Below are positions 2,817 through 53,739 of a stretch of 64,000 nt of DNA, piece by piece. The translations under genes were made by a program, and so were the position numbers. The notes beneath the pieces are model-generated. The model was not told where the DNA came from, searched no databases, and saw only the letters and a program-made list of their open reading frames with translations. Position 1 is the first letter of the stretch. Each line of letters begins with the position of its first letter. The stretch lies in the IMG/VR virus record IMGVR_UViG_3300032334_002567, positions 1-64,000 of that record; one strand, written 5' to 3'.

Positions 2817-3116
2817 CTAAACCCCAGCTTCGATCAAATCCATCAAGGGACGTCTTACCAAAGTGCTTTTTGATGAAACAATCCTTCTTTTCTGGCTTGA
2901 ACGTAAATTGCTTTGTTTCGCAATCTTACTACGGTTATAGGTCTTTACAGGGGCTTTTGAGGCCACTCTAACAATATTTCCGTCCCTGAGTTCGTAACCC
3001 TTAATATGGTCCTTTGTGGACTCAATAACCAATACGGTTCTGCGAACCGGATGAGTGTGATTCCCCTTATACCAAAAACGAGCTACTGGGACATTTTCAA
3101 CTAAATCATACTTCAT
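2817..3116 (-). CDS. Small basic protein, possibly WYL/Sm-like fold
   Basis: VARFWY...RRTVLV...IKGYELR...KTYNRSKI loosely matches the WYL pattern; ATGA overlap with the upstream gene. Confidence 0.4.
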   Translation of the reverse strand: MKYDLVENVPVARFWYKGNHTHPVRRTVLVIESTKDHIKGYELRDGNIVRVASKAPVKTYNRSKIAKQSNLRSSQKRRIVSSKSTLVRRPLMDLIEAGV

Positions 3117-3655
3117 TTGTCAATCTCCTTTCTAATTTCTGTGAGTAACTGTGAAGCATATCGTGCATCTCCAAGTAATTTATTAGAAAATCGTGTGTCA
3201 GTCAAGGGGACTACATATAATAAATTTTCTTTCACAACATCAGGAGTGTCATGAGGCTCATATTGATCTTCTGGCAATTCGACTTCTGCTATTGCCATAT
3301 AAATATGCTCTTTATAATCTCTAAAGAAATCAATTTCCCAAGTATTTTCAAATGAATTAATTATATAACGGGTTTTTTCTAAACGGTTAAGAGCTATATT
3401 CCAAAGATCATCAAAATCTCGCTTATCTAACTTCTTTTCTACTTCTATAGCTCTACCACCTGTTGTAGCTTTTAAAGTAAAATAGTACTCAGTCTTTTGA
3501 TTGCTTAGTTTTACAGACTTACGAACACGTACCGTTATACCTCTTGTGGCTATAAGATAACCTTGGGATATGTCATACTGTGAGGATGAATTCTTTTTAA
3601 CTTCCGACTCACAGAGAGAATCTATGACATATTTTCTTTCATTTTCTGTAGGAAT
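3113..3655 (-). CDS. CYTH / triphosphate tunnel metalloenzyme (CyaB-like), 180 aa, ATT start; the ORF track shows only the last 61 aa
   Basis: (M)PTENERKY (ExExK), ISQGYL, VRVR, FTLK, EVE, EKTRY, WEIDFF, IAEVEL, DTRFSNKLL; AGGAGA 7 nt upstream of ATT. Confidence 0.88.
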   Translation of the reverse strand: MPTENERKYVIDSLCESEVKKNSSSQYDISQGYLIATRGITVRVRKSVKLSNQKTEYYFTLKATTGGRAIEVEKKLDKRDFDDLWNIALNRLEKTRYIINSFENTWEIDFFRDYKEHIYMAIAEVELPEDQYEPHDTPDVVKENLLYVVPLTDTRFSNKLLGDARYASQLLTEIRKEIDK

Positions 3656-41824: not shown

Positions 41825-44098
41825 ATGTCAAAGCAACACAAGAAAACGAGAAACTTTCACGCTGGAATGGGTCAAGCTGTAGCGGAGAGAACGATTCTCA
41901 GAAAGAAAGAAGATGGTAAGTGGGAAACATGGGCAGATGTTGCCAATCGTGTTGCACTAGGAAATTCACTTCTATGCAAAGAATCAAAAGAACAAGAGTC
42001 AGAATATGAGGCTTTACAAAAGCATTTAATAAACGCAACAACTCTTATGAGCGGTAGACATCTACAGCACGGAGATGAGTCGCAACCAGAAAGAAACATG
42101 GAAGTTTACACCAACTGTTCAACTTCCAGCACTAGCTTCATGCTTTTTTACTTATTAATGAACGGTTCTGGTGTGGGTAGAAGTTATGACGACGACATGA
42201 TGCTTGTTGATTGGGATAACGCTCCAGCTCTTAGGTGTGTTTTAAGTGAAACTCATGCAAATTTTGATTTTTCGGCTCACGAATCTGTGAGAGATGCAAA
42301 ACACAAATATGGCAGCGGCAAAGACGTTTTATGGCATCTCGTTGAAGATACAAGAGAGGGATGGGCAAAAGCACTAGAAATATGGGAAAATGCAGCTTTT
42401 GAAAAAATCCATAAAGATAAATTGTTCATACTTGACTTTTCAAACGTTCGACCAAAAGGTGCTCCTATAAATGGAATGCAGAAACGTCCAGCTAGCGGAC
42501 CTGTTCCCTTGATGAACGCATTCAACAAAGCTGCAACTCTAAAAGCAACTGGTTTGCCCCGGTGGATGCAGACAATTTATATTGATCATTATTTTGCCGA
42601 ATGTGTTTTGGTCGGTGGGGCCAGAAGAGCAGCAAGAATGTCTACTAAGACATGGAGAGATGATAGTGTGTTAGAATTTATTACTATCAAAAGACCAATT
42701 GAATTTGCCAATAAAGGGGTAGATGAAATAACAGAGCTAAGAAAGCAAATAAGTCCAATGGGATTCTTGTGGTCTTCAAACAATAGCATTACTGTTGACC
42801 AAGAATTCTGGAAGCTCTTGAATGTAAAAAAAGGTAGTGAAGAATATAGTTCTGAATTAGCCAAACATGCAAGGAATGTTTATAAACTTGCAGTTTCTGC
42901 TTCTTATGGTGATGGCACTGGTGAGCCTGGATTTATCAATGTTGACAAACTAAATCAAGATAAGCTCGGAACTGAGAAGCTTGTTAAAGAAAGTGACTCA
43001 CTTGTTGGTAGCAAAAAATATAGCTTAAATGAAGACACAGGACTTTATATTAATAGGCTTTTGAAGAAAGCTGTTAAAAAACAGCATTTCATGATAACCA
43101 ATCCATGTGGTGAAATTTCTATTGCTGTGTGGGGTGCTTTTTGCACTATTGCGGATGTGGTTCCTTATCATGCTGAAACCTTGGAAGAAGCAGAAGACGC
43201 ATTTAGGTGTGTTACAAGAGCTTTAATCAGGGTAAACACCATGGATAGTGTTTATAAAAAAGAAGTTAAAAGAACTAACAGAATAGGAGTTGGAATAACT
43301 GGGATTCATGAATTTGCATGGAAGTTCTTTGGATTAGGATTTAAAGATCTAATAAATGAAGAAAAGTCCAAGGAATTTTGGATGACTATGGCAAGATTTA
43401 AAAGAGCCGTGCAAGACGAAGCCAGAGAATACTCAAAGAAAATTGGCGTAAATGTTCCTCATTCTGACACGACAATTAAGCCTGCTGGCACAACGAGTAA
43501 ATTATTTGGCCTCACAGAGGGATGGCATCTACCGTCTATGAGATGGTACATGAGATGGGTTCAATTCAGTAAATCAGATCCATTGGTCAAAAAGTATAGT
43601 GAATCTGGTTACCCTGTGAAAGAACTGACTAGCTACCAGAATACTGTTATTATCGGATTTCCAACTACCCCAGTTATAACTGAGCTTGGGATGGAAGACG
43701 CCCTGATTACAGCCGGTGAAGCTTCACCAGAAGAGCAGTACAAGTGGTTAATGCTCGGTGAAAAATACTGGATTCGTGGCGTAGATGTTGACGGAAATCC
43801 ACTAGATAAAGATACGGGAAACCAAATTAGCTACACGTTAAAGTACAACCCCAATAAGGTTGATTTTAAGACTTTCTGTGACACGCTAAAAAATAGTCAG
43901 AGCCTAATTAAATGTTGTTCGGTAATGCCACAAGAAGATCGTAGCAGTTATGAATATTTACCAGAGGAATCGGTGACAAAAGCAGAATACGAAAACGTTG
44001 TAAGAAAAATTACTTCTTCTTTGCAGGAAGACGTAGATCGTACACACGTAGATTGTGCAGGCGGTGCATGTCCCGTTGACTTTAAGAAAGAATCATGA
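41825..44098 (+). CDS. nrdJ: Class II (adenosylcobalamin-dependent) ribonucleotide reductase
   Basis: TNCS, GSGVG, GGARRAA, GEPG, TNPCGE, RIGVG, TTIKPAGTTS, C-terminal CAGGACP; no beta-subunit gene in the window. Confidence 0.88.
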   Translation: MSKQHKKTRNFHAGMGQAVAERTILRKKEDGKWETWADVANRVALGNSLLCKESKEQESEYEALQKHLINATTLMSGRHLQHGDESQPERNMEVYTNCSTSSTSFMLFYLLMNGSGVGRSYDDDMMLVDWDNAPALRCVLSETHANFDFSAHESVRDAKHKYGSGKDVLWHLVEDTREGWAKALEIWENAAFEKIHKDKLFILDFSNVRPKGAPINGMQKRPASGPVPLMNAFNKAATLKATGLPRWMQTIYIDHYFAECVLVGGARRAARMSTKTWRDDSVLEFITIKRPIEFANKGVDEITELRKQISPMGFLWSSNNSITVDQEFWKLLNVKKGSEEYSSELAKHARNVYKLAVSASYGDGTGEPGFINVDKLNQDKLGTEKLVKESDSLVGSKKYSLNEDTGLYINRLLKKAVKKQHFMITNPCGEISIAVWGAFCTIADVVPYHAETLEEAEDAFRCVTRALIRVNTMDSVYKKEVKRTNRIGVGITGIHEFAWKFFGLGFKDLINEEKSKEFWMTMARFKRAVQDEAREYSKKIGVNVPHSDTTIKPAGTTSKLFGLTEGWHLPSMRWYMRWVQFSKSDPLVKKYSESGYPVKELTSYQNTVIIGFPTTPVITELGMEDALITAGEASPEEQYKWLMLGEKYWIRGVDVDGNPLDKDTGNQISYTLKYNPNKVDFKTFCDTLKNSQSLIKCCSVMPQEDRSSYEYLPEESVTKAEYENVVRKITSSLQEDVDRTHVDCAGGACPVDFKKES

Positions 44099-44646
44099 AT
44101 TTCAAAGATTTTTTAGTTTGCGAACAACAAGTAAGTTTGAGCCAAAAAATTGGCCCGATCCTAGGGGACGCACAACAGTTGCGTGATCAGGCCAATAAGC
44201 TTGCTGTAAAGCATTTAGCCCAATTTTCTGGGGATGTGGTGAGAAAGATAAGGGATATACTTCATAGCCATTGGTCGGATGAACAAGTTAAATATTTAGA
44301 AAGGCTAAGAATTGTAGCTTTTAATATAGCTGATGCTATAAAAGAAAAAGGAGACCTACCAGGAATCATAGCTGCATCTGTGGAAGAATTAGATAAAATT
44401 GTTAAGGACATTGGTTCTCCAATAAACTCACTTGCAGTTGATCCAGGAACCGATAATAAAGAAACGGATTCAAAGGGCACAAGTCCCGCAATTAAGAACG
44501 TACCAAATAAGGACCAGTCCAAGCCGCCAGCACAAACTAAAACTGTTGATTCGGCCGTAACAGCTACAAATCCACTTAGCAACGATCCTGAGTCGGTTGT
44601 AAGCCCTCCTTTGGGAGGCAGCTCTGGTACTTTAGATGCGTTTTAA
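44095..44646 (+). CDS. Hypothetical protein with capsid-targeting-like N-terminus
   Basis: MNFKDFLVCEQ. Confidence 0.6.
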   Translation: MNFKDFLVCEQQVSLSQKIGPILGDAQQLRDQANKLAVKHLAQFSGDVVRKIRDILHSHWSDEQVKYLERLRIVAFNIADAIKEKGDLPGIIAASVEELDKIVKDIGSPINSLAVDPGTDNKETDSKGTSPAIKNVPNKDQSKPPAQTKTVDSAVTATNPLSNDPESVVSPPLGGSSGTLDAF

Positions 44647-44648
44647 CA

Positions 44649-44677
44649 TTGATTTTCTTAAATAATTTAAATATAAT
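44649..44677 (+). promoter_or_regulatory. Sigma70-like promoter for guaC and the GATase
   Basis: TTGATT-17 nt-TATAAT. Confidence 0.6.
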
Positions 44678-44713
44678 CCTAAGCACCTTCCCCAATTAAT
44701 TAGGATAGAAAAA

Positions 44714-45757
44714 ATGAAAGTTGAAAGCGAAATAAAGCTAGATTTCAACGATGTGTTAATAAAGCCAAAAAGAAGTAGTCTCGAAAGCAGATCTCAAGTA
44801 GACCTGAATAGAGAATACAAATTTAGAAATTCTTCCATAAAAATTGAGGTTGGTGTGCCTCTCGTAGCAGCCAACATGGATACAATTGCTACGTTTGAAA
44901 TGGCCCGAGCTTTGTCAAAAAGAAACATATGGACAGCCTTACATAAATTTTACTCTATCAATGAGATTGAAAAATTTTTTAAAGAAGAAGCAGACGTAGC
45001 TTCTAAGTGCTTTTATTCTCTAGGAATAAATGAAGATGATTTTGATAAGATAAAAAAACTTCAAGGATTAGGTGTAAAGCTTCCGTTCATTTGTGTTGAC
45101 GTTGCAAACGGCTATAGCCAAAAGTTCGTAAATGAATGTGGTTATTTAAGAAAGCTATTCCCAAATGCAGTAATATTGGCTGGGAACGTATGTACACCAG
45201 AAATGGTACAAGAGCTACTGATTTCGGGCGGAGTGGACATAATTAAAGTAGGGATAGGTGGTGGAAGTGGATGTATCACTAGGCATACAACGGGCATAGG
45301 ATTTCCACAACTTAGTGCCGTAATAGAATGCGGCGATGCTGCTCATGGTCTAGGCGGGCATATCTGCTCTGATGGTGGTTGTAGGGCTCCTGGCGACATA
45401 GCCAAAGCATTTGCTGCTGGTGCTGACTTTGTGATGATGGGAGGCATGTTAGCGGGGCATGATGAATGTGGAGGTGAATTTAAACTAAATGAAAATGGCG
45501 AAAGAAAATCCATGTGTTTTTATGGAATGAGCTCTGAGCTTGCTATGAAAAAATACTATGGAGGCAAAGCTAGCTATAGAGCAAGTGAAGGAAGAGTAAT
45601 AGAAGTCCCCTATAAAGGCCATGTAGATCAGACTATAGAACAAATATTGGGTGGGTTAAGAAGCACTTGCACTTATGTTGGTACAGATAAATTAAAAGAC
45701 TTATCAAAGTGCACTACATTTATAAGAGTGAATAGAGTACACGATAATATGAATTAA
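44714..45757 (+). CDS. guaC: GMP reductase
   Basis: KLDFNDVLIKPKRS, AANMD, DVANGY, KVGIGGGSGCITR, SDGG, FYGMSS, YRASEG, GGLRSTCTYVG. Confidence 0.93.
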   Translation: MKVESEIKLDFNDVLIKPKRSSLESRSQVDLNREYKFRNSSIKIEVGVPLVAANMDTIATFEMARALSKRNIWTALHKFYSINEIEKFFKEEADVASKCFYSLGINEDDFDKIKKLQGLGVKLPFICVDVANGYSQKFVNECGYLRKLFPNAVILAGNVCTPEMVQELLISGGVDIIKVGIGGGSGCITRHTTGIGFPQLSAVIECGDAAHGLGGHICSDGGCRAPGDIAKAFAAGADFVMMGGMLAGHDECGGEFKLNENGERKSMCFYGMSSELAMKKYYGGKASYRASEGRVIEVPYKGHVDQTIEQILGGLRSTCTYVGTDKLKDLSKCTTFIRVNRVHDNMN

Positions 45758-45768
45758 GAGGTGAAAAT

Positions 45769-46911
45769 ATTTGTGGAATAGCAGGTTTTATAGGTTTATC
45801 TAAAAAACCTATCTTTAGTTACCAGCTTACAACTAAACTATTTGAAATAAGTGAATCCAGAGGAATTGATGCCGCAGGATTTTGGGCCGTGCGTCCTGAT
45901 GGTGGCGTTATATACCATAAAAAACCCATTAGATCATCTAGGTTTGTAAAGAGAGATGAATGGAGGGATGTTTTTAAATATAATCCTAATTTATTATTAG
46001 CACACGCAAGAGGAGCTTCTAAAGGTGTAGGAGAGCCTATGTTTAATAAAAACAATCATCCTTTCACAAGCTTAGACAAGTCTATTGGTCTTATCCACAA
46101 TGGCAGGGTAGAAGACTCTGAGTATCGGTCTTTAAAAAAAGCATATGAAGTATCAAGTGATTGCGATTCTGAAGTTATCCTTAGAATAATAGAAGCTGGC
46201 TCGCACTATCATCCGCATGAGATTACAGAGTTTATAAATCTGGATTATCCAAATAGATTAGCAGGGATTAGGGACGTTTATTCCTTTATAAACTCTGGTC
46301 ATTTAGCTGTGGCTGTGGGTGAGAGGAATGACGAAAACAATAGATCCCTGTGGCTTTTTAGAAACGCTTATAGACCTCTTTGGATTGTGGATATGCGTGA
46401 GCTACTAGGACAAATATTCTTTGTCTCAGAGCCGGGAATATGGGAGGAGTCAATAAATGAATGTCCTTCTATTAGAGGACATTCTAAATTTCAAAAATTA
46501 ATAGAGTTGCCACCGGAAGAAGTTTGGTTGATAGAATCAACAAAAGAAGAACCAACTCCAAATAAAATAAAAAAATACAAAGTTTCTAAAAGCAAAGAAA
46601 TAAGTGCTAATGAAATAAACAAATATTTTCCATTGATAGAAAAGCAGCCGTCGTTTGAAGTAATAAGCACAATAAGCGAAGAAAAAGAAACCCACCAATT
46701 TTTCGAAAATAATGATTGGGAAGAATTAGAATTAAAAGAGCTTGAAAGTAAATGCAACAAAGTTTCAGAAACTGTTCAAGAAATTAAAAATTGGGTAAAA
46801 GAAAAAACTACAAAACAGTCTATAGGCAAGGACGAAATAGATAGAATCTCTAATTTAATGAATAATCAAATCGATGATATGAACAAAATAGTTTCAATAC
46901 TGGAGAATTAG
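45769..46911 (+). CDS. Class II (Ntn) glutamine amidotransferase, ATT start
   Basis: (M)CGIAGFIG, SRGIDAAG, LAHARGAS, NNHPF, HNG, CDSE; GAGGTG SD 5 nt before ATT. Confidence 0.88.
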   Translation: MCGIAGFIGLSKKPIFSYQLTTKLFEISESRGIDAAGFWAVRPDGGVIYHKKPIRSSRFVKRDEWRDVFKYNPNLLLAHARGASKGVGEPMFNKNNHPFTSLDKSIGLIHNGRVEDSEYRSLKKAYEVSSDCDSEVILRIIEAGSHYHPHEITEFINLDYPNRLAGIRDVYSFINSGHLAVAVGERNDENNRSLWLFRNAYRPLWIVDMRELLGQIFFVSEPGIWEESINECPSIRGHSKFQKLIELPPEEVWLIESTKEEPTPNKIKKYKVSKSKEISANEINKYFPLIEKQPSFEVISTISEEKETHQFFENNDWEELELKELESKCNKVSETVQEIKNWVKEKTTKQSIGKDEIDRISNLMNNQIDDMNKIVSILEN

Positions 46912-46942
46912 TAACTATATAAGATATAGAAATGAGGTTTCT

Positions 46943-47482
46943 ATGTCTTATAATTTTGAAGATTTTGAAGATTTTGTTACAGACGAAGATTTCTTAAATA
47001 AGAAGAAAAAGAAAAAAGTTAATGGAAAGAAAAAAGGCAATAGGACTGAGCTTGAACTAACTAAAATACTCAATAAGAGATTCGGAACAGGATTCAGCAG
47101 ATCAGTTGGCTCCGGAAATCGTTGGTCACAAACTAACCACTTGCCAAAACACGCCCAAGAAATATTTTCTGGGGACCTGATTGTTCCTTTGGGGTTTAAG
47201 TTTGTATTAGAAAGCAAGGGCGGCTACGAAGACATAGACATAAATGGTCTATTTGTACGAGGCAACAAAGAACTTGATGGATTCTTGGACCAAGTTTCAA
47301 GAGATGCCAAAAGATGTGACAAAAAACCAATGCTATGCTGGAAGAAAAACAGAAAACCGTGGTTGGTTGCTATTTTGACTAAAGACATGACACGGGAGTT
47401 CAAATATGAACTTCGCTACGGAAAATGGTCTATTCTAGCACTTGAAGAACTTCTAGGTTTAGAGGACGAGTTTTTCATCTAA
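46943..47482 (+). CDS. Holliday junction resolvase (Hjc-like PD-(D/E)XK)
   Basis: KKKGNRTE, RSVGSG, GDL, VLESK, Q..RDA, PML.WK. Confidence 0.8.
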   Translation: MSYNFEDFEDFVTDEDFLNKKKKKKVNGKKKGNRTELELTKILNKRFGTGFSRSVGSGNRWSQTNHLPKHAQEIFSGDLIVPLGFKFVLESKGGYEDIDINGLFVRGNKELDGFLDQVSRDAKRCDKKPMLCWKKNRKPWLVAILTKDMTREFKYELRYGKWSILALEELLGLEDEFFI

Positions 47483-47894: not shown

Positions 47895-49118
47895 CTATTC
47901 AAAATCCGACAAGTTGAAGAAATTGCATTCTTCTGAAATAAACTTTTTAGTCGAGAAATCAGTTAGAAACCAGTACCAATTCTTGGGTTTCTCTGGCTCA
48001 ACTGCTTCTCCATAGCCATCCGTTATGACGAAAACGCCGTCTGGGTACTTTTCACCATTTTGGATATGCTGCTGGATTGTTTGCTCCAATACAGCTAAAG
48101 AAGTGCCTCCACCACCATAAACAGAGACTTTCCCATTCTGCTTTGGACTAACTTCTGCCACCTTAGTATCGAAGCAAAATAGACGAACGTCAAATTTTTC
48201 GGAAGGCAATGAAGAAACTGCGGAGAAAAACCTATCTTTGTATCCCCAGCAAGACCCAGAGGTGTCAAGAAAGAAGTAAATTTTAATTTTAGATTTGCTC
48301 TTTTCAAGATGTTCAACTTCCATTTCTGACGGGATAAAGATTTCATCTAAGGCGGTAAGTCCTGATAAACGTCGATTAATTCTAGCCCATTGATCTATTT
48401 CTTTAAATTTACTTTGGTATTTGGCGTGGCACCATTTCTTGATTACAGTTTCCCATTTTCTTTTTTTTGTTTTAACTTCAAAATTTAAAACCTGCCAGAT
48501 TCCTTCCCCTAGCCCAATATGTTTTTGTATAGCATCAGAGAGACTCTTTTTTTCTTCTTTTGACATGCCTTCCAAAATATTGTTAGGAAGGTCGTTTTTA
48601 AAGGCGTGTTCGTCTACAGTGGATATTTCACCTTCACCTGGACCACCATCTCCGAATGACTTTTCAAACAAACTGTAGTAAAACTCATATGTTTCAGAAT
48701 TGGAAAGGTTAACTTTTTCTGCGAAAACGGTGTCCACCCAACAATAACTTTCCCAATTAAGTATGCTTTCTCTCTTAAAACCAAATTTTTCCACTAAAAG
48801 ATGGTTGACAACCACATCTAGGCATTGGTTACAGGCCAACATATTCACAGAGTCTTTAGTTCTTTTGCCGTGATTCAAAATCAAGTGCAAAGATTCATGG
48901 CAAATTACAAAGAGTTTATTGTAATAATCTAAAGAGTTCCAGAAATCCTCATTAAAAAGAAAGACAACAAACTCTCCTTCTTTGTCAAATTGAACGGCGG
49001 CCGTGTTGACTCTATTGGTAAAATGAGGTTTACCAATTTGCCATATTTTATAAAATATGGCATGGTGTTCTTCTAAACTCCTACTAATCTCTATCCACTC
49101 TTTATTTGTAATGCTCAT
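47895..49118 (-). CDS. Metallopeptidase (HExxH) plus VWA domain protein (DUF2201-like)
   Basis: TAAV, CHESLH, D..VN, VDEH; LDTSGS (MIDAS), FDT, GGGT, VITDG. Confidence 0.88.
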   Translation of the reverse strand: MSITNKEWIEISRSLEEHHAIFYKIWQIGKPHFTNRVNTAAVQFDKEGEFVVFLFNEDFWNSLDYYNKLFVICHESLHLILNHGKRTKDSVNMLACNQCLDVVVNHLLVEKFGFKRESILNWESYCWVDTVFAEKVNLSNSETYEFYYSLFEKSFGDGGPGEGEISTVDEHAFKNDLPNNILEGMSKEEKKSLSDAIQKHIGLGEGIWQVLNFEVKTKKRKWETVIKKWCHAKYQSKFKEIDQWARINRRLSGLTALDEIFIPSEMEVEHLEKSKSKIKIYFFLDTSGSCWGYKDRFFSAVSSLPSEKFDVRLFCFDTKVAEVSPKQNGKVSVYGGGGTSLAVLEQTIQQHIQNGEKYPDGVFVITDGYGEAVEPEKPKNWYWFLTDFSTKKFISEECNFFNLSDFE

Positions 49119-49128
49119 TTTAGTTGCT

Positions 49129-50820
49129 CTAGGCGTAGAAGTTCTCTATAGCATAATTAAAGTGCTCCTGAGTTCTCACTACCTTATGAATATTTCCAGA
49201 TAATCTTATTGCAGAAAAAAGAGTAGTGAAGATTCTTGAATTATCAACCAAAAAACTACTAAAGTCTTTTGGAGTAGGAACTAACTTGGCAACCCAATCG
49301 GCGTTAGACAGCCAACTTTTCTCTTTGCTGGAGAATTTTCTATTCTGTACGCCAGATACAATACAATGGTTAACTATCGAAATAAAGTTTGCCCAAGGGT
49401 CTCTAGGATCTAATAAACCCTGTGAAACTTCTGTGGGCGAAAGCTCCATATTACATAATATTTCCAAGCAATTCATTGCTTCTTCACCCGTCATTAATTT
49501 GGGAATAGATTTCACTATATTCTGAAACTCTCCCAACCGTAACTTTGAAAGATCGGCATTTTTTTGTATTTTTTCTAAAGTGGTTCCCCACATTACACTC
49601 ATAGCCTTCTTGTTATAAAAAGGCTGTGCTAGATTTATCAGGTCTCCTTCATTATCTTCAAACTTAATAGCCTGCAACTCTGTGAAATACTTTCTAATTT
49701 TCTTTACCACGCTACTGTTGGTGTTGGCCTTTAGTATCTCTTCACAAACTTCTTTAAATACAGAAACCTTGTCGATTTTTCCAATAATGTACGTAGAAGT
49801 CTTGCTGTTTTCAGAAATTAAAGAAGATATTTTTTCTTTTGGAACAAGTGGCAAAAAGTAATCTTTTAATGCGTCTGACTTAAGAACGTACTTCATGGCA
49901 GATGCATAGTTGTTCTCATTTGAAAGAAAAACTTTTGCTTGATCTGTATCTTTGGCAGACATCAAAGATTCAAGCTTTTCTAAAATAGGACCGCTACTTA
50001 GAGAAGAATAAAGCTTTGAAATATTACTAGATGAAGGGAGTATGTCTCTCATATCCCCCTTACAGCAATATGTATCCAGAGCATATTGCAGCCTTCTGGG
50101 TGATACCTTGCCTTTTTCTTCTGTTGAAAGGTCTTCCCACCATTGAATAGCCGAGTCGGCTGTTCTCTGTCCGTATCTAGTGCGAAACCAGTCAACACTA
50201 GGCGAGTAGGGAACTTCCACAGATACATGGAAACGATCTTTTTGTGCTGGGTCTAGCCTTTCAACGTCATAAGTTTGATCTTCATCATCTGGATTGATTG
50301 CAGCCCAGATCATTTTTAATTTAGGAAATTTGTATCCGTTAATGGATTTAAATTGCAGCAGCTCCATTACCGCATTTCTAACTTTTTTAGGGCTGCGGTT
50401 AAACTCATCAAAAAATAACGCCTCTATTTCCCCTGTGGCGAAAACAAGAGGACGGATCAAGTCCAAATATGCCAAGCCCTGTTCTCTGCCTATCGCATGA
50501 TCTACGATCTTTGATGCAGATGATTCTGACATTTTCCAATTAGAAACAACCCAATCAACAGCAAGTTGCCGGTCGATTGTTGAAAGCTCTTTCAAAATTA
50601 AGAATTGTTCTGGGACTTTATTCTCTATTTTCTCTTTTGGAACACCAACAAAGTCAACCCAAGGGTCCATTGTAGAGGCACTAAAATACCTGTAATTTAT
50701 TGAGCGACGTTCAAAAGCATCTTTTACCATGGCTGTTTTACCAACGCCATGCCTGCCGATGAACAAAACATTCTGGCTATTTTCAATCCAGAATTCAATT
50801 TTTTTGTCGATTTGATTCAT
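49129..50820 (-). CDS. MoxR-type AAA+ ATPase with long C-terminal extension
   Basis: GRHGVGKT, DFVGVP, FFDEFNR, AAINP, LDPAQKDRF, SPRR. Confidence 0.88.
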   Translation of the reverse strand: MNQIDKKIEFWIENSQNVLFIGRHGVGKTAMVKDAFERRSINYRYFSASTMDPWVDFVGVPKEKIENKVPEQFLILKELSTIDRQLAVDWVVSNWKMSESSASKIVDHAIGREQGLAYLDLIRPLVFATGEIEALFFDEFNRSPKKVRNAVMELLQFKSINGYKFPKLKMIWAAINPDDEDQTYDVERLDPAQKDRFHVSVEVPYSPSVDWFRTRYGQRTADSAIQWWEDLSTEEKGKVSPRRLQYALDTYCCKGDMRDILPSSSNISKLYSSLSSGPILEKLESLMSAKDTDQAKVFLSNENNYASAMKYVLKSDALKDYFLPLVPKEKISSLISENSKTSTYIIGKIDKVSVFKEVCEEILKANTNSSVVKKIRKYFTELQAIKFEDNEGDLINLAQPFYNKKAMSVMWGTTLEKIQKNADLSKLRLGEFQNIVKSIPKLMTGEEAMNCLEILCNMELSPTEVSQGLLDPRDPWANFISIVNHCIVSGVQNRKFSSKEKSWLSNADWVAKLVPTPKDFSSFLVDNSRIFTTLFSAIRLSGNIHKVVRTQEHFNYAIENFYA

Positions 50821-50823
50821 AAT

Positions 50824-50867
50824 AAAAAAGTAGCTCCGTTGAGAAGGCAAACCTCTCAACGGAGCTA
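50824..50867 (-). terminator. 14-bp perfect hairpin plus U-tract (terminator/attenuator)
   Basis: TAGCTCCGTTGAGA-9 nt-TCTCAACGGAGCTA-CTTTTTT. Confidence 0.8.
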
Positions 50868-52090: not shown

Positions 52091-52759
52091 ATGATTTGGC
52101 ACTCCCCCAAAATTTTAATTTGTTTGCCTACATTTCACTCAGAAATAGCATGGCTTGAACGATCTACAGAATCAGTTTCAAAGCAAACTTACGCAAACTT
52201 TGATTGCTATCTAGTCAAAGATTCTTGTACCAAGGCAGGCACTCCATGCCTTGAGTGCGACAACTGCAGGGCGACTGTGTCTTTTTGCCAGAAGCTTGCA
52301 CAAAAGGATAAAAGATTCAAGTTTTTTAATTTGCCTCTTAATTGTGCAGGTGCAGGTTGGGGGCCGAGAAATTTTGCTATACAAAATACTAAGCATGATT
52401 TAATAGCCTACCTAGATGATGATAATTGGTATGAGCCAAATCATCTAGAACTGTTGCTAGAAGCTTTAAAATCTAAAGATTCAGATATGGCATACACAGG
52501 CACTAGGTTAATTAAAAAAGATGGAACAATAGAAGGCATAAGAATTCATCCGTATGAGCCAAAGCAAGGGTACATAGATACATCTGAAATACTACACAAG
52601 AGGTTTTTAATAGAAAAATATGGAGGGTGGAGATGGGTAAAAAAAGGAAATGATTGGGATATAGTCTCTAGGTGGGTTCCGGGGTTAAAATGGAGCCACA
52701 CAAATCAAATCACCTTAAATTTTTACCTTCGTGAAGGATGTGGAATACACAGAACTTAA
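52091..52759 (+). CDS. Glycosyltransferase family 2
   Basis: LPTF, SVSKQTY, PRNFAI, IAYLDDDN, IDTS, NDW; AAGGAGG SD; CTAAATA upstream. Confidence 0.88.
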   Translation: MIWHSPKILICLPTFHSEIAWLERSTESVSKQTYANFDCYLVKDSCTKAGTPCLECDNCRATVSFCQKLAQKDKRFKFFNLPLNCAGAGWGPRNFAIQNTKHDLIAYLDDDNWYEPNHLELLLEALKSKDSDMAYTGTRLIKKDGTIEGIRIHPYEPKQGYIDTSEILHKRFLIEKYGGWRWVKKGNDWDIVSRWVPGLKWSHTNQITLNFYLREGCGIHRT

Positions 52760-53166
52760 AAGAACTTCCAGAATTTTGATTTTTCTTTTGGTTTTTGCTC
52801 TGGCTCTTCTTTTATTTTTTGAGCTAACATTTTTTGCTTTTCTTTTTTTCTTGCATTGTGTATGGCTCTTTTCACAAGTAGTTTGGCTGCGATTGGAATA
52901 AAAGGTAGATTCCTTTTATCCGACTCTTCTTTGAGCCAATCAACCACTCTATCAATGTTTTGTTCTGTCCATTCGCTTCCATTTTGATCCATTATTGCAG
53001 CTCTTTCGTTACATTTACAACTTGGAGTAGGAACTATGCCTACTTTTGCTAAAAGAGCTTTTAGTTCAGTGCCGGGACCTTCAGGGTTTTCTAGATAATT
53101 TTGTAGATTTTCTATGTATCTGGTTCTTAGATTTTGTACGTCTTCTATGTTGAAAGATTTACGCAT
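52756..53166 (-). CDS. Conserved-looking phage protein with a CxC motif
   Basis: GPGTELKALL..VGI...CKCNERA..MD..G..W...N...VDWLKEE...R.LPF. Confidence 0.65.
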   Translation of the reverse strand: MRKSFNIEDVQNLRTRYIENLQNYLENPEGPGTELKALLAKVGIVPTPSCKCNERAAIMDQNGSEWTEQNIDRVVDWLKEESDKRNLPFIPIAAKLLVKRAIHNARKKEKQKMLAQKIKEEPEQKPKEKSKFWKFF

Positions 53167-53739
53167 TTAATTTGCCTCTTTACGTAATCTAAAATTATTT
53201 CTACTAATCATAGCACGAGTTTGATGTGCAAAAGAAACTATATCTGCCCTGTGTTCGGTGATTGTTTCTTTAGCAGGCAAACCAGAATCTAATTTATCCA
53301 AGCAAACTACTAAAGGTATTCTAGCAACCGGACCAAAGTGAAAACATCCATCTTTTAGTATCGCTCCACATTGCTTTGCTGCTTCCCAAGCATCTTCTTT
53401 GCTAACATTTGGAAACTCAACAAAGCTATTCTCTAAATTTTCTATTGTTATTCTTTCTGGTTCTTGACTTGGAGGCTCAAACAAAGAGTCAAGCGGAGTA
53501 GTATAGGTGCAACAATCCTCAGCATTAATATCACAACAATCAAAACACTCTGTGTAGCATCGTCTATCACAAAAACAGCCGTCGTCTTGTGGTGATCCAG
53601 TTGGAACACAAAGAGGTCCTGGACCACCGAGGGCACAAGTCCAGTTAGGATTTTGATCGTCTGGTGGGTAACAGCAACCTTCTGCTTTTGCCAACATTAC
53701 AAATAAAATATCGTCTTCTTCTTGTTTTTCTTGGCTCAT
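53167..53739 (-). CDS. Cys-rich protein with somatomedin-B-like spacing in the N-terminal half
   Basis: GCC...C...C...CFCDRRC...CFDCC....DCC. Confidence 0.6.
   Translation of the reverse strand: MSQEKQEEDDILFVMLAKAEGCCYPPDDQNPNWTCALGGPGPLCVPTGSPQDDGCFCDRRCYTECFDCCDINAEDCCTYTTPLDSLFEPPSQEPERITIENLENSFVEFPNVSKEDAWEAAKQCGAILKDGCFHFGPVARIPLVVCLDKLDSGLPAKETITEHRADIVSFAHQTRAMISRNNFRLRKEAN

What the first reader, a model, noticed from the sequence alone, without database searches (positions are those of the whole stretch)
45755..45800. Second independent ATT start, fixed by the Ntn Cys1 requirement
Seen: GAGGTG-AAAAT-ATT TGT GGA ATA GCA GGT = (M)CGIAG, with an in-frame stop at 45745-45747 and no canonical start between. 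Known: class II GATases need Cys as residue 1 after Met removal, so 45769 is the only workable start. Two ATT starts with good SDs in one 64-kb window are unlikely to be chance errors. The Dam gene (GAGGTG-CTTT-TTG-ATT) may be a third non-ATG case.
Basis: partly seen in the sequence, partly recalled or inferred. Interest (0 to 1): 0.75.

Follow-up and report, generated by a model that had tools for sequence, protein, structure and literature searches.

The report
Real ATT start codon, phage amidotransferase
A glutamine-splitting enzyme gene of a giant freshwater phage really does begin with the rare start codon ATT, a third of its relatives in other giant phages do the same, always with an unusually strong ribosome-binding site, and standard gene finders therefore cut off the enzyme's catalytic first residue.

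Summary
TAA lies at 45745-47, GAGGTG at 45758-63, ATT at 45769-71 and Cys TGT at 45772-74. No ATG/GTG/TTG occurs in frame before GTG 45889.

The ATT is a genuine start, not an error. It stands in contigs from two samples and in a 93%-identical strain.

Among 101 distinct homologues, all from huge-phage contigs, the codon before Cys1 is always start-capable:
- ATG 46
- ATT 27
- ATC 7
- GTG 12
- TTG 9

ATT/ATC arose or was lost at least 6-13 times.

ATT/ATC comes with a much stronger Shine-Dalgarno site: mean -12 kcal/mol against -5 for ATG. GGTG ends exactly 4 nt upstream in 28 of 34.

Flanking genes in the same loci use canonical starts.

The protein is a stand-alone Ntn (class II) glutaminase with all catalytic residues.

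Two further genes of this 381-kb phage also start with ATT: window 3655(-) and genome 114505. Orthologues have ATG/GTG/TTG at the same codon.

The phage encodes IF3, S21 and peptide deformylase. It has no IF1, MetAP or initiator tRNA.

The mechanism, a weak AUU start rescued by an extended SD, is already known. Its recurrence across a phage gene family is new.

The parts
45745..45747 (+). In-frame TAA that closes the reading frame upstream of the ATT
45758..45764 (+). Extended Shine-Dalgarno GAGGTGA. Its duplex with the 16S 3' end is -11.7 kcal/mol, in the top ~3% of this genome's genes. It lies 5 nt upstream of ATT
45769..45771 (+). ATT initiation codon, read as fMet
45772..45774 (+). TGT, the catalytic N-terminal Cys (Cys1 after Met removal)
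45769..46911 (+). Full coding sequence of the stand-alone Ntn (class II) glutaminase, 380 aa. The glutaminase domain covers about residues 1-275, followed by a C-terminal helical hairpin
45889..45891 (+). GTG that public gene callers took as the start. The 340-aa product lacks Cys1
44714..45757 (+). GMP reductase (guaC) whose stop lies 11 nt before the ATT. It is absent from this position in all other loci examined
44095..44646 (+). 183-aa protein of unknown function. It is the conserved upstream neighbour of the glutaminase in 54 of 57 loci and uses canonical starts
46943..47482 (+). PDDEXK_15 nuclease-like protein. It is the conserved downstream neighbour in 55 of 57 loci and uses canonical starts
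41825..44098 (+). Class II (B12-dependent) ribonucleotide reductase at the head of the conserved module
3113..3655 (-). The other ATT-start gene of the window: 180 aa, phrog_6660, N-terminus (M)PTENERKY. ATT is at 3655-3653 and AGGAG lies 8 nt upstream. There is no canonical start for 119 codons. Orthologues carry TTG or ATT at the same codon
9142..9981 (-). Dam-type N6-adenine methyltransferase with GAGGTG-CTTT-TTG. This is an ordinary TTG start

Best explanation
ATT at 45769 is the true initiation codon of a 380-residue stand-alone Ntn-type (class II) glutaminase.

How it most likely works:
1. The 30S subunit is held by an extended, start-proximal Shine-Dalgarno site (GAGGTGA) that pairs with the CACCUC of the 16S 3' end. 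This places initiator fMet-tRNA on the near-cognate AUU.
2. Deformylase and methionine aminopeptidase then remove fMet and expose Cys1, the nucleophile.
3. The weak codon lowers initiation. In model bacteria this costs roughly 10- to 100-fold and depends on IF3. The strong SD partly restores it.

The same architecture, GGTG-N4-AUU/AUC, recurs in a third of the orthologues in other huge phages. It also occurs in about 1-2% of the homologue-bearing genes of this phage and of one of three relatives examined, so it is a maintained expression setting and not an accident.

What is shown and what is inferred:
- Shown: the sequence facts, the homology-defined N-terminus, recurrence, SD co-variation, gene specificity, and persistence across strains.
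- Inferred: that fMet-tRNA initiates there, that the output is low, and that it is sensitive to IF3.
For: - Sequence and frame.
- Cys aligns to position 1 of the glmS and asn_synth models and to Cys1 of PurF chains.
- C2, R81, N111-G112 and D133 are invariant in 34 homologues, in the columns of PurF's catalytic Cys, Arg, Asn-Gly and Asp.
- The AlphaFold model has pLDDT 87.7, and its best matches are the GlmS, PurF and EgtC glutaminase domains.
- Codon before Cys1 in 101 distinct homologues: ATG 46, ATT 27, ATC 7, GTG 12, TTG 9, none other.
- 13 switches on the tree, at least 6 of them forced by well-supported branches. One well-supported clade of 9 diverged members is entirely ATT/ATC.
- Mean SD duplex energy: ATG -5.2, TTG -7.7, GTG -8.2, ATT -11.7, ATC -12.6 kcal/mol. 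An SD of -9 or stronger occurs in 30/34 ATT/ATC genes against 3/67 canonical ones.
- GGTG ends 4 nt upstream in 28/34 ATT/ATC genes and is absent from all 46 ATG genes.
- Flanking gene families in the same loci show no non-canonical starts (0 of 55 in each family).
- The ATT is kept in a second sample and in a 93%-identical strain.
- Two database homologues called truncated proved to have ATT starts.
- Two more ATT-start genes in this genome have ATG, GTG or TTG at the orthologous codon elsewhere.
- Precedent: the AUA start of infC and the two newly found conserved non-canonical starts in S. aureus (AUU, AUA) all have extended SDs; reporters with such AUU/AUA starts gave ~10% of AUG (PMC13009471). 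AUU gives 1-2% of AUG in E. coli (bioRxiv 10.1101/063800).
Against: - There is no direct evidence of translation: no proteomics, ribosome profiling or RNA reads. The host is unknown.
- The test of SD strength against start codon by phylogenetically independent pairs has only 6 well-supported pairs. All informative ones go the same way, but the sign test gives a median p of about 0.06.
- The run evidence consists of assembler contigs, not raw reads, so rare variants at the ATT cannot be excluded.
- No amidotransfer partner or substrate was identified, so the reason for tuning this particular gene is unknown.
Confidence: 0.9

Rival explanations
1. Translational coupling. The ATT is used mainly by ribosomes that have just terminated on the upstream gene and re-initiate a few bases downstream, where start-codon choice is less strict. 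De novo initiation would be minor. This is a variant of the main explanation, not an alternative start site.
For: All three ATT-start genes of this genome lie 8-11 nt after the stop of an upstream same-strand gene. In the family, 13 of 18 ATT/ATC genes have an upstream ORF ending within 25 nt. In E. coli reporters with close or overlapping stop and start, re-initiation and de novo initiation contribute about equally (PMC3592434).
Against: ATG-start homologues are coupled at a similar rate: 14 of 27. The very strong SD argues for direct 30S capture. Five of 18 ATT/ATC genes had no upstream ORF detected within 60 nt.
Confidence: 0.3
2. IF3-tuned switch. AUU-start genes are a small phage regulon whose translation is set by the level or kind of IF3. 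The phage's own IF3 gene has an ATG start and so lacks the AUU autoregulation of bacterial infC. It would raise or relax start-codon stringency during infection and thereby time these genes.
For: The phage encodes a full-length IF3 (infC equivalog, 164 bits, both domains) with an ATG start, and S21 and peptide deformylase about 5 kb upstream of it. Among contigs of 200 kb or more, IF3 is present in 4 of 4 with ATT-start glutaminase against 3 of 7 with a canonical start. All seven other phage IF3 genes examined have an ATG available. IF3 is the known gatekeeper against AUU.
Against: By my own hand calculation, the association is not significant (about p = 0.1). Most contigs are fragments, so absence of IF3 means little. 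Extra IF3 should repress AUU starts, not help them. There is no timing or expression data.
Confidence: 0.2
3. Translation starts at GTG 45889, as in the public gene call, giving a 340-aa protein without Cys1. The conserved upstream 40 codons would be untranslated.
For: GTG 45889 is the first canonical in-frame start. Gene callers chose it.
Against: The 40 upstream codons encode the most conserved part of the family, including the invariant C2, G3, G6, G9 and S11. The truncated product would lack the nucleophile. No strong SD was seen before the GTG, which lies inside conserved coding sequence. Homologues with ATG start at the Cys.
Confidence: 0.02
4. Sequencing or assembly error, or a decaying gene that has lost its ATG and is no longer made.
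For: The window is a metagenome assembly. A single G-to-T change would turn ATG into ATT.
Against: The sequence is identical in a second sample. The ATT is kept in a strain that differs at 66 of 1001 positions, and of the 7 differences listed inside the gene up to 45942, 6 fall on third codon positions. The frame is intact for 380 codons with all catalytic residues. 34 independent homologues carry ATT or ATC with a matched strong SD. ATA is never seen although ATG to ATA needs only one base change, which points to selection and not decay.
Confidence: 0.02
5. An N-terminal propeptide made from an upstream start, or a frameshift fusion with guaC, is later cleaved to expose Cys1. B. subtilis PurF is matured this way.
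For: Some Ntn enzymes are matured by autoproteolysis (established knowledge).
Against: An in-frame TAA lies 8 codons upstream with no start between. In several ATT orthologues the stop is only two codons upstream. guaC is in another frame and is absent from this position in other loci.
Confidence: 0.01

Closest known systems
AUU-initiated bacterial genes: E. coli infC and pcnB, E. faecalis ebpA, S. aureus cvfC1
   Same: A near-cognate AUU serves as the start codon. It is conserved among relatives and paired with a strong or extended, start-proximal Shine-Dalgarno site. It is expected to lower translation and make it IF3-dependent (PMC13009471, PMC4447247, PMC3592434, bioRxiv 10.1101/063800).
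   Different: Here the gene is a phage metabolic enzyme. The trait recurs in 34% of a family of 101 distinct sequences, with at least 6-13 switches among ATG, GTG, TTG, ATT and ATC. The N-terminus is fixed by enzyme chemistry and not by experiment. Regulation by IF3 is untested.
Class II (Ntn, PurF-type) glutamine amidotransferase domains: GlmS, PurF, AsnB, EgtC, Gat-QueC
   Same: Cys1 nucleophile directly after the initiator Met. Conserved Arg, Asn-Gly and Asp. Four-layer Ntn fold: TM by target 0.70-0.73 to the isolated GlmS glutaminase domain and to EgtC.
   Different: There is no fused synthase or acceptor domain. The C-terminus is instead a roughly 100-residue helical hairpin. Sequence identity to any solved enzyme is only 13-19%. 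The family is confined to huge phages: one hit in 185,579 species genomes, on a 546-kb contig. Substrate and partner are unknown.
Translation genes of huge phages (IF1, IF3, S21, S1, PDF; Al-Shayeb et al. 2020, PMC7162821)
   Same: This 381-kb phage carries IF3, S21 and peptide deformylase, as reported for huge phages.
   Different: In the full-text searches I ran I found no report linking these factors to non-canonical start codons in the phage's own genes. The link proposed here is only a lead.

Membership tests
Class II (Ntn) glutamine amidotransferase, glutaminase domain | Catalytic Cys is residue 1 of the mature protein, directly after the initiator Met | tested here: met
   Cys is the codon after ATT. 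It aligns to position 1 of TIGR01135 and TIGR01536 and to Cys1 of PurF chains. It is invariant in 34 homologues.
Class II (Ntn) glutamine amidotransferase, glutaminase domain | Conserved Arg, Asn-Gly oxyanion hole and Asp that bind glutamine (PurF Arg73, Asn101-Gly102, Asp127; numbering from memory) | tested here: met
   R81, N111-G112 and D133 are invariant. They align to the haR / hnG / DSE columns of E. coli PurF.
Class II (Ntn) glutamine amidotransferase, glutaminase domain | Four-layer alpha-beta-beta-alpha Ntn fold | tested here: met
   The model has pLDDT 87.7. Foldseek gives E of 5e-12 or weaker, probability 1.0, to GlmS and PurF among its top 50 matches, and 1.9e-9 to EgtC at rank 50.
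Class II (Ntn) glutamine amidotransferase, complete amidotransferase | A synthase or acceptor domain, fused or as a partner, that receives the ammonia | tested here: not met
   No second catalytic domain is present. Residues of about 300-380 form a helical hairpin. The conserved neighbours (183-aa unknown protein, PDDEXK_15) have no recognised synthase fold. A partner may exist but was not identified.
Genes initiated at a non-canonical AUU codon | No canonical in-frame start between the upstream stop and the homology-defined N-terminus | tested here: met
   in several orthologues the stop is two codons upstream.
Genes initiated at a non-canonical AUU codon | Orthologues carry a canonical start at the same codon, and the non-canonical codon is conserved in relatives | tested here: met
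   ATG 46, GTG 12, TTG 9, ATT 27, ATC 7. A clade of 9 is entirely ATT/ATC. A 93%-identical strain keeps the ATT.
Genes initiated at a non-canonical AUU codon | Strong or extended Shine-Dalgarno site at short spacing | tested here: met
   -11.7 kcal/mol here, against a genome median of -6.0. Family-wide co-variation is seen.
Genes initiated at a non-canonical AUU codon | Direct evidence of initiation: N-terminal peptide, initiation-site ribosome profiling, or toeprint | not testable with these tools
   Only DNA contigs of metagenomes were available. The host is unknown.
infC-type IF3 autoregulation | Expression responds inversely to IF3 level through the AUU codon | not testable with these tools
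   The phage IF3 gene itself has an ATG start. No expression data exist.

The most novel reading that the evidence does not exclude
A lineage of huge freshwater phages that carries its own IF3 gene (ATG start, so without the AUU autoregulation of bacterial infC), together with S21 and deformylase, keeps a small set of genes behind a fixed GGTG-N4-AUU/AUC initiation site. The set includes the Ntn glutaminase, an FmdB-like zinc ribbon, a phrog_6660 protein, and in a relative a 411-codon gene. Translation of this set would be switched by the phage's change of start-codon stringency during infection. That would be a virus-encoded start-codon regulon.
Probability: 0.15. Interest if true: 0.8.

Novelty: new member of a known kind. 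Interest (0 to 1): 0.55.

Why it matters
There are three practical consequences and one open question.

1. Annotation. Standard gene finders do not allow ATT or ATC. About 31% of the database entries of this family are therefore mis-called. 32 of 120 are called short and lack the Cys1 motif (two checked were ATT starts; some may be cut by contig ends), and 5 are extended upstream. A reader of those entries would take an active enzyme for a dead one.

2. A test bed. An enzyme whose chemistry fixes residue 1 is a natural ruler for start codons. This family shows that AUU and AUC are used repeatedly in nature when, and almost only when, the Shine-Dalgarno site is extended and close. That is the same rule found experimentally in S. 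aureus. The data also show a graded compensation: ATG is weaker than TTG and GTG, which are weaker than ATT and ATC in SD strength.

3. Frequency. In this phage and one of three relatives examined, about 1-2% of genes with homologues start with ATT. In E. coli only two AUU starts (infC, pcnB) have been confirmed.

4. Open question. These phages carry IF3, the factor that polices exactly this choice. This makes the long-standing question of what phage-encoded initiation factors are for directly testable with simple reporters.

Tried and rejected
- Megablast of the region against deposited phages found nothing. A single-sequence scan of viral contigs also found nothing, so an alignment was needed.
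- I considered the 7-deazaguanine (Gat-QueC) pathway for the glutaminase because of a fold match. I rejected it: the genome has no TGT/DpdA and only a below-threshold PP-loop hit.
- An Atlas search for the conserved 183-aa neighbour gave only weak fold matches, with TM below 0.45.
- Searches for an initiator tRNA, IF1 and methionine aminopeptidase in the phage found none.
- The association between phage IF3 and the ATT-start glutaminase is suggestive (4/4 against 3/7 large contigs) but not significant, and it is limited by fragmentary contigs.
- I asked whether phage infC genes themselves use ATT. All eight (this phage's and seven others) have an ATG.
- The independent-pairs test of SD strength against start codon is underpowered, with 4 and then 6 well-supported pairs.
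- The first all-against-all homology scan for non-canonical N-termini was swamped because two 'relatives' (G014, G051) are the same phage and match in every frame. I redid it with those pairs and antisense frames removed.
- A candidate at G000 117000 turned out to be a non-coding leader. The true neighbouring gene starts with TTG.
- Other SD+ATT hits of the first genome scan are simply ATT codons next to a real ATG.
- An out-of-frame TTG that overlaps ATT-TGT cannot give the conserved protein (reading).
- RNA evidence was not obtained. Reads were laid on DNA contigs.
Full report
**1. The observation**

The window is the first 64 kb of a 381,443-bp IMG/VR virus record. CheckV estimates it as 79% complete, so it is a huge phage.

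At the reported place the plus strand reads TAA(45745-47) TAT GAA TTA AGA GGT GAA AAT ATT(45769-71) TGT GGA ATA GCA GGT.
- GAGGTGA occupies 45758-64.
- The stop of the upstream gene, TAA 45755-57, lies in another frame.
- No ATG, GTG or TTG lies in frame between the TAA and the ATT.
- The frame then runs open to 46911.
- The first canonical in-frame start is GTG 45889.
- The public protein collection holds this gene as a 340-aa product that starts at that GTG (P0001).

**2. What the gene is**

Read from the ATT, the product has 380 residues.
- Pfam gives GATase_6.
- The NCBIfam models for GlmS and asparagine synthase align their first position to this Cys.
- A profile of 34 homologues aligns to E. 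coli PurF with the Cys on PurF Cys1. The invariant R81, N111-G112 and D133 fall on the Arg, Asn-Gly and Asp columns of the PurF glutaminase site.
- An AlphaFold model (pLDDT 87.7) matches the glutaminase domains of GlmS, PurF, EgtC and Gat-QueC. The TM-score by target is 0.70-0.73 to the isolated GlmS domain and to EgtC.
- There is no acceptor domain. The last ~80 residues form a helical hairpin.

It is therefore an intact, stand-alone Ntn glutaminase, and the chemistry of that family requires Cys as the first residue. A product that started at GTG 45889 would lack the nucleophile and the most conserved 40 residues.

**3. Error or real**

*Contigs of public runs.* Contigs of four public runs were laid on 45300-46300.
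- One run carries the stretch identically at k-mer depth 58 and is probably the source.
- A second sample of the same study carries 45680-46076 identically.
- A third run carries a strain with 66 differences in 1001 bases. That strain changes 45759 (A>G, inside the SD) and 45767 (A>C, in the spacer) but lists no change in ATT-TGT. Of the 7 differences listed inside the gene up to 45942, 6 fall on third codon positions.

These are assembler contigs, not raw reads, so rare variants cannot be excluded. An assembly error is nevertheless not tenable.

*Homologues.* An alignment-based scan returned 80 loci from viral contigs and 80 from metagenome contigs. In 101 distinct N-termini the codon immediately before Cys1 is ATG 46, ATT 27, ATC 7, GTG 12 and TTG 9, and never anything else.
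- If ATT were an ordinary sense codon of a longer protein, other codons would appear at this position.
- In several ATT loci an in-frame stop lies two codons upstream.
- ATA is absent. Before TGT or TGC it would create an out-of-frame ATG, which is a sufficient reason (my reading of the sequences).

*Database entries.*
- Of the 120 best database homologues, 77 begin MCG.
- 32 are called truncated and lack the Cys1 motif.
- 5 are called with an upstream extension that reads Ile-Cys-Gly.
- Two of the truncated calls were fetched, and both have GGTG-TATT-ATT-TGC.

**4. Recurrence and compensation**

- On a maximum-likelihood tree of the 101 proteins, ATT/ATC against canonical needs 13 changes. 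At least 6 are forced by branches with SH-aLRT of 95 or more.
- In the first tree, a well-supported clade of nine members with end branches of up to 0.6 changes per site is entirely ATT/ATC. The state therefore persists.
- The predicted duplex between the 20 nt upstream and the 16S 3' end averages -5.2 kcal/mol for ATG, -7.7 for TTG, -8.2 for GTG, -11.7 for ATT and -12.6 for ATC. In the first set of 57, a Mann-Whitney test of ATT/ATC against ATG gave p = 7e-8, which ignores phylogeny.
- A duplex of -9 or stronger occurs in 30 of 34 ATT/ATC genes and in 3 of 67 canonical ones.
- By phylogenetically independent pairs there are only six well-supported contrasts. On average 5.4 go the expected way and none the other, with a sign-test median p of about 0.06.
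- GGTG ends exactly 4 nt before the start in 28 of 34 ATT/ATC genes. It ends 5 nt before in the window. It is absent upstream of all 46 ATG genes.
- In this genome the SD of the glutaminase (-11.7) is in the top ~3% of 352 crudely called genes, whose median is -6.0.

**5. Gene-specific or genome-wide**

Both, at different scales.

*Within the loci.* The glutaminase sits in a conserved same-strand module: ribonucleotide reductase, a ~180-aa unknown protein, the glutaminase, then a PDDEXK_15 protein. The two immediate neighbours are present in 54 and 55 of 57 loci. In those same loci the neighbours start with ATG 46 / TTG 6 / GTG 3 and ATG 53 / TTG 1 / GTG 1. None lacks a canonical start at the family N-terminus. 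The glutaminase is therefore a hot spot.

*Within the genome.* This phage has at least two more ATT-start genes.
- Window 3655-3113 on the minus strand encodes 180 aa of phrog_6660. It has no canonical start for 119 codons and reads AGGAG-N8-ATT. Its 75%-identical orthologues have TTG at the same codon, and a 65%-identical one has ATT.
- Genome 114505-114840 encodes a Zn_ribbon_8 (FmdB-like) protein, (M)PRYDFHCKDC. It has no canonical start anywhere in 111 codons and reads AGGTGA-N3-ATT. Its 21 distinct orthologues have ATG 13, ATT 4, GTG 3 and TTG 1 at that codon.

*Homology-based scan.* I scanned 228 genes of this genome that have homologues in four related contigs. It found only these three genes.
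- The related phage G014/G051 has two such genes among 135.
- One is a 411-codon gene with AGGAGGTG-TACC-ATT (-16 kcal/mol). Its orthologue here starts with TTG at the same codon.

That is about 1-2% of genes in this phage and in G014/G051; of the two smaller related contigs, one had 1 of 18 and the other 0 of 50. [quoted passage not shown]

All three ATT genes here lie 8-11 nt downstream of the stop of a same-strand gene. Re-initiation may therefore contribute. In the family, however, ATG-start members are coupled at a similar rate.

**6. The translation apparatus of the phage**

- Present: a full-length IF3 (infC equivalog, 164 bits, N and C domains) at 149285-149815, with an ATG start.
- Present: S21 at about 143297-143419.
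- Present: a peptide deformylase at about 143889-144263.
- Absent: IF1 and methionine aminopeptidase.
- tRNAs: ten were found. The single tRNA(CAT) has a paired G1-C72 and an A/U-rich anticodon stem, so it is not an initiator.

The phage IF3 belongs to a clade of about 65 metagenomic relatives at 50-93% identity. Named cellular IF3s start at about 51% identity and come from various phyla, so no host can be read from it.

IF3 was found in 7 of 50 records that carry the glutaminase. Among contigs of 200 kb or more it is present in 4 of 4 with an ATT start (this genome included) and in 3 of 7 with a canonical start. This is a lead and not a result.

All phage IF3 genes examined have an ATG, unlike bacterial infC. 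Huge phages are already known to carry IF1, IF3 and S21 (PMC7162821).

**7. Mechanism**

The best-supported reading is ordinary in kind.
- A near-cognate AUU (or AUC) is decoded by initiator tRNA because an extended, start-proximal SD holds the 30S subunit in register.
- fMet is then removed and Cys1 is exposed.

This is the rule described for S. aureus. There the AUA start of infC and the two newly found conserved non-canonical starts, cvfC1 (AUU) and ccpN (AUA), all have extended SDs; cvfC1, ccpN and citZ reporters with AUU/AUA gave about 10% of the AUG level (PMC13009471). In E. coli, AUU, AUC and AUA give 1-2% of AUG and are policed by IF3. An AUU construct modelled on infC shows mixed de novo initiation and re-initiation (PMC3592434).

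The following are inferred and not shown: that output is lower than from ATG, that it depends on IF3, and why this enzyme in particular is kept at that setting. A free glutaminase without a fused acceptor may be harmful in excess, but that is a guess.

**8. Comparison and novelty**

- As an enzyme, it meets every tested criterion of the class II glutaminase domain. It lacks a recognisable acceptor domain.
- The family is confined to huge phages. There was one hit in 185,579 species genomes, on a 546-kb contig of a MAG. CheckV completeness of the fragments implies genomes of about 450-500 kb.
- As a start site, it is a new member of the known class of AUU starts with extended SDs.
- I did not find the following described in the full-text searches I ran: the scale of recurrence in one family, the graded SD compensation across five start codons, the multiple ATT-start genes in one phage lineage, and the coincidence with a phage IF3. 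That is a limited search and not proof of absence.

**9. Verdict**

The Dam remark is trivial, because TTG is an ordinary start. Interest is moderate. The mechanism is known, but the case is unusually clean. It has an immediate annotation consequence, and it offers a simple experimental handle on what phage-encoded IF3 does.

Noticed in passing
G000 143297-149815 (outside the window; loci L083, L227, L082): A translation-related cluster: ribosomal protein S21, peptide deformylase, and about 5 kb further a full-length IF3 with an ATG start. There is no IF1 or MetAP in the record.
   Followed up: partly
G000 193850-194622 (locus L175): The only tRNA(CAT) is not initiator-like. It lies next to a 224-aa PP-loop protein with a weak, below-threshold QueC-type hit. 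This could be a tRNA-Ile2 with a TilS-like lysidine synthetase.
   Followed up: no
window 41825-47482 and loci L002-L074: The module of class II RNR, ~180-aa unknown protein, Ntn glutaminase and PDDEXK_15 protein is conserved in 54-55 of 57 distinct huge-phage loci. Only this phage has guaC (44714-45757) inserted between the unknown protein and the glutaminase.
   Followed up: partly
L174 (CALFYV010000090.1, 546,147 bp): The only hit in 185,579 species genomes lies on a 546-kb contig of a MAG labelled Bacteriovoracaceae. A near-identical-length contig (546,038 bp, L147) is in the metagenome set. It looks like a huge phage genome binned into a bacterial MAG.
   Followed up: no
G014 52097-53332 (-) and G000 about 117300-118509 (+): A 411-codon gene, (M)PRRIEEDHKDF..., starts with AGGAGGTG-TACC-ATT in the related phage. 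Its 85%-identical orthologue in this genome starts with GGAG-N7-TTG at the same codon.
   Followed up: partly
G000 379600-380700 (-): A 363-codon ORF is built of short repeats (ACAGGTGGTATATT-like units). It produced many false SD+ATT hits in the genome scan and is probably a repetitive structural protein.
   Followed up: no
whole genome G000: By a crude call of 352 long ORFs, 16% start with TTG and 8% with GTG. The median SD duplex is -6.0 kcal/mol against -2.5 at random positions, so the host evidently uses Shine-Dalgarno sites.
   Followed up: partly
window 47895-50859 (-): Two neighbouring minus-strand genes were noted: a VWA/metallopeptidase-like protein (DUF2201_N, VWA_CoxE) and a MoxR-like AAA ATPase (AAA_3/AAA_5). 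Together they form a MoxR-VWA pair, conserved downstream in about 20 of the related loci.
   Followed up: no
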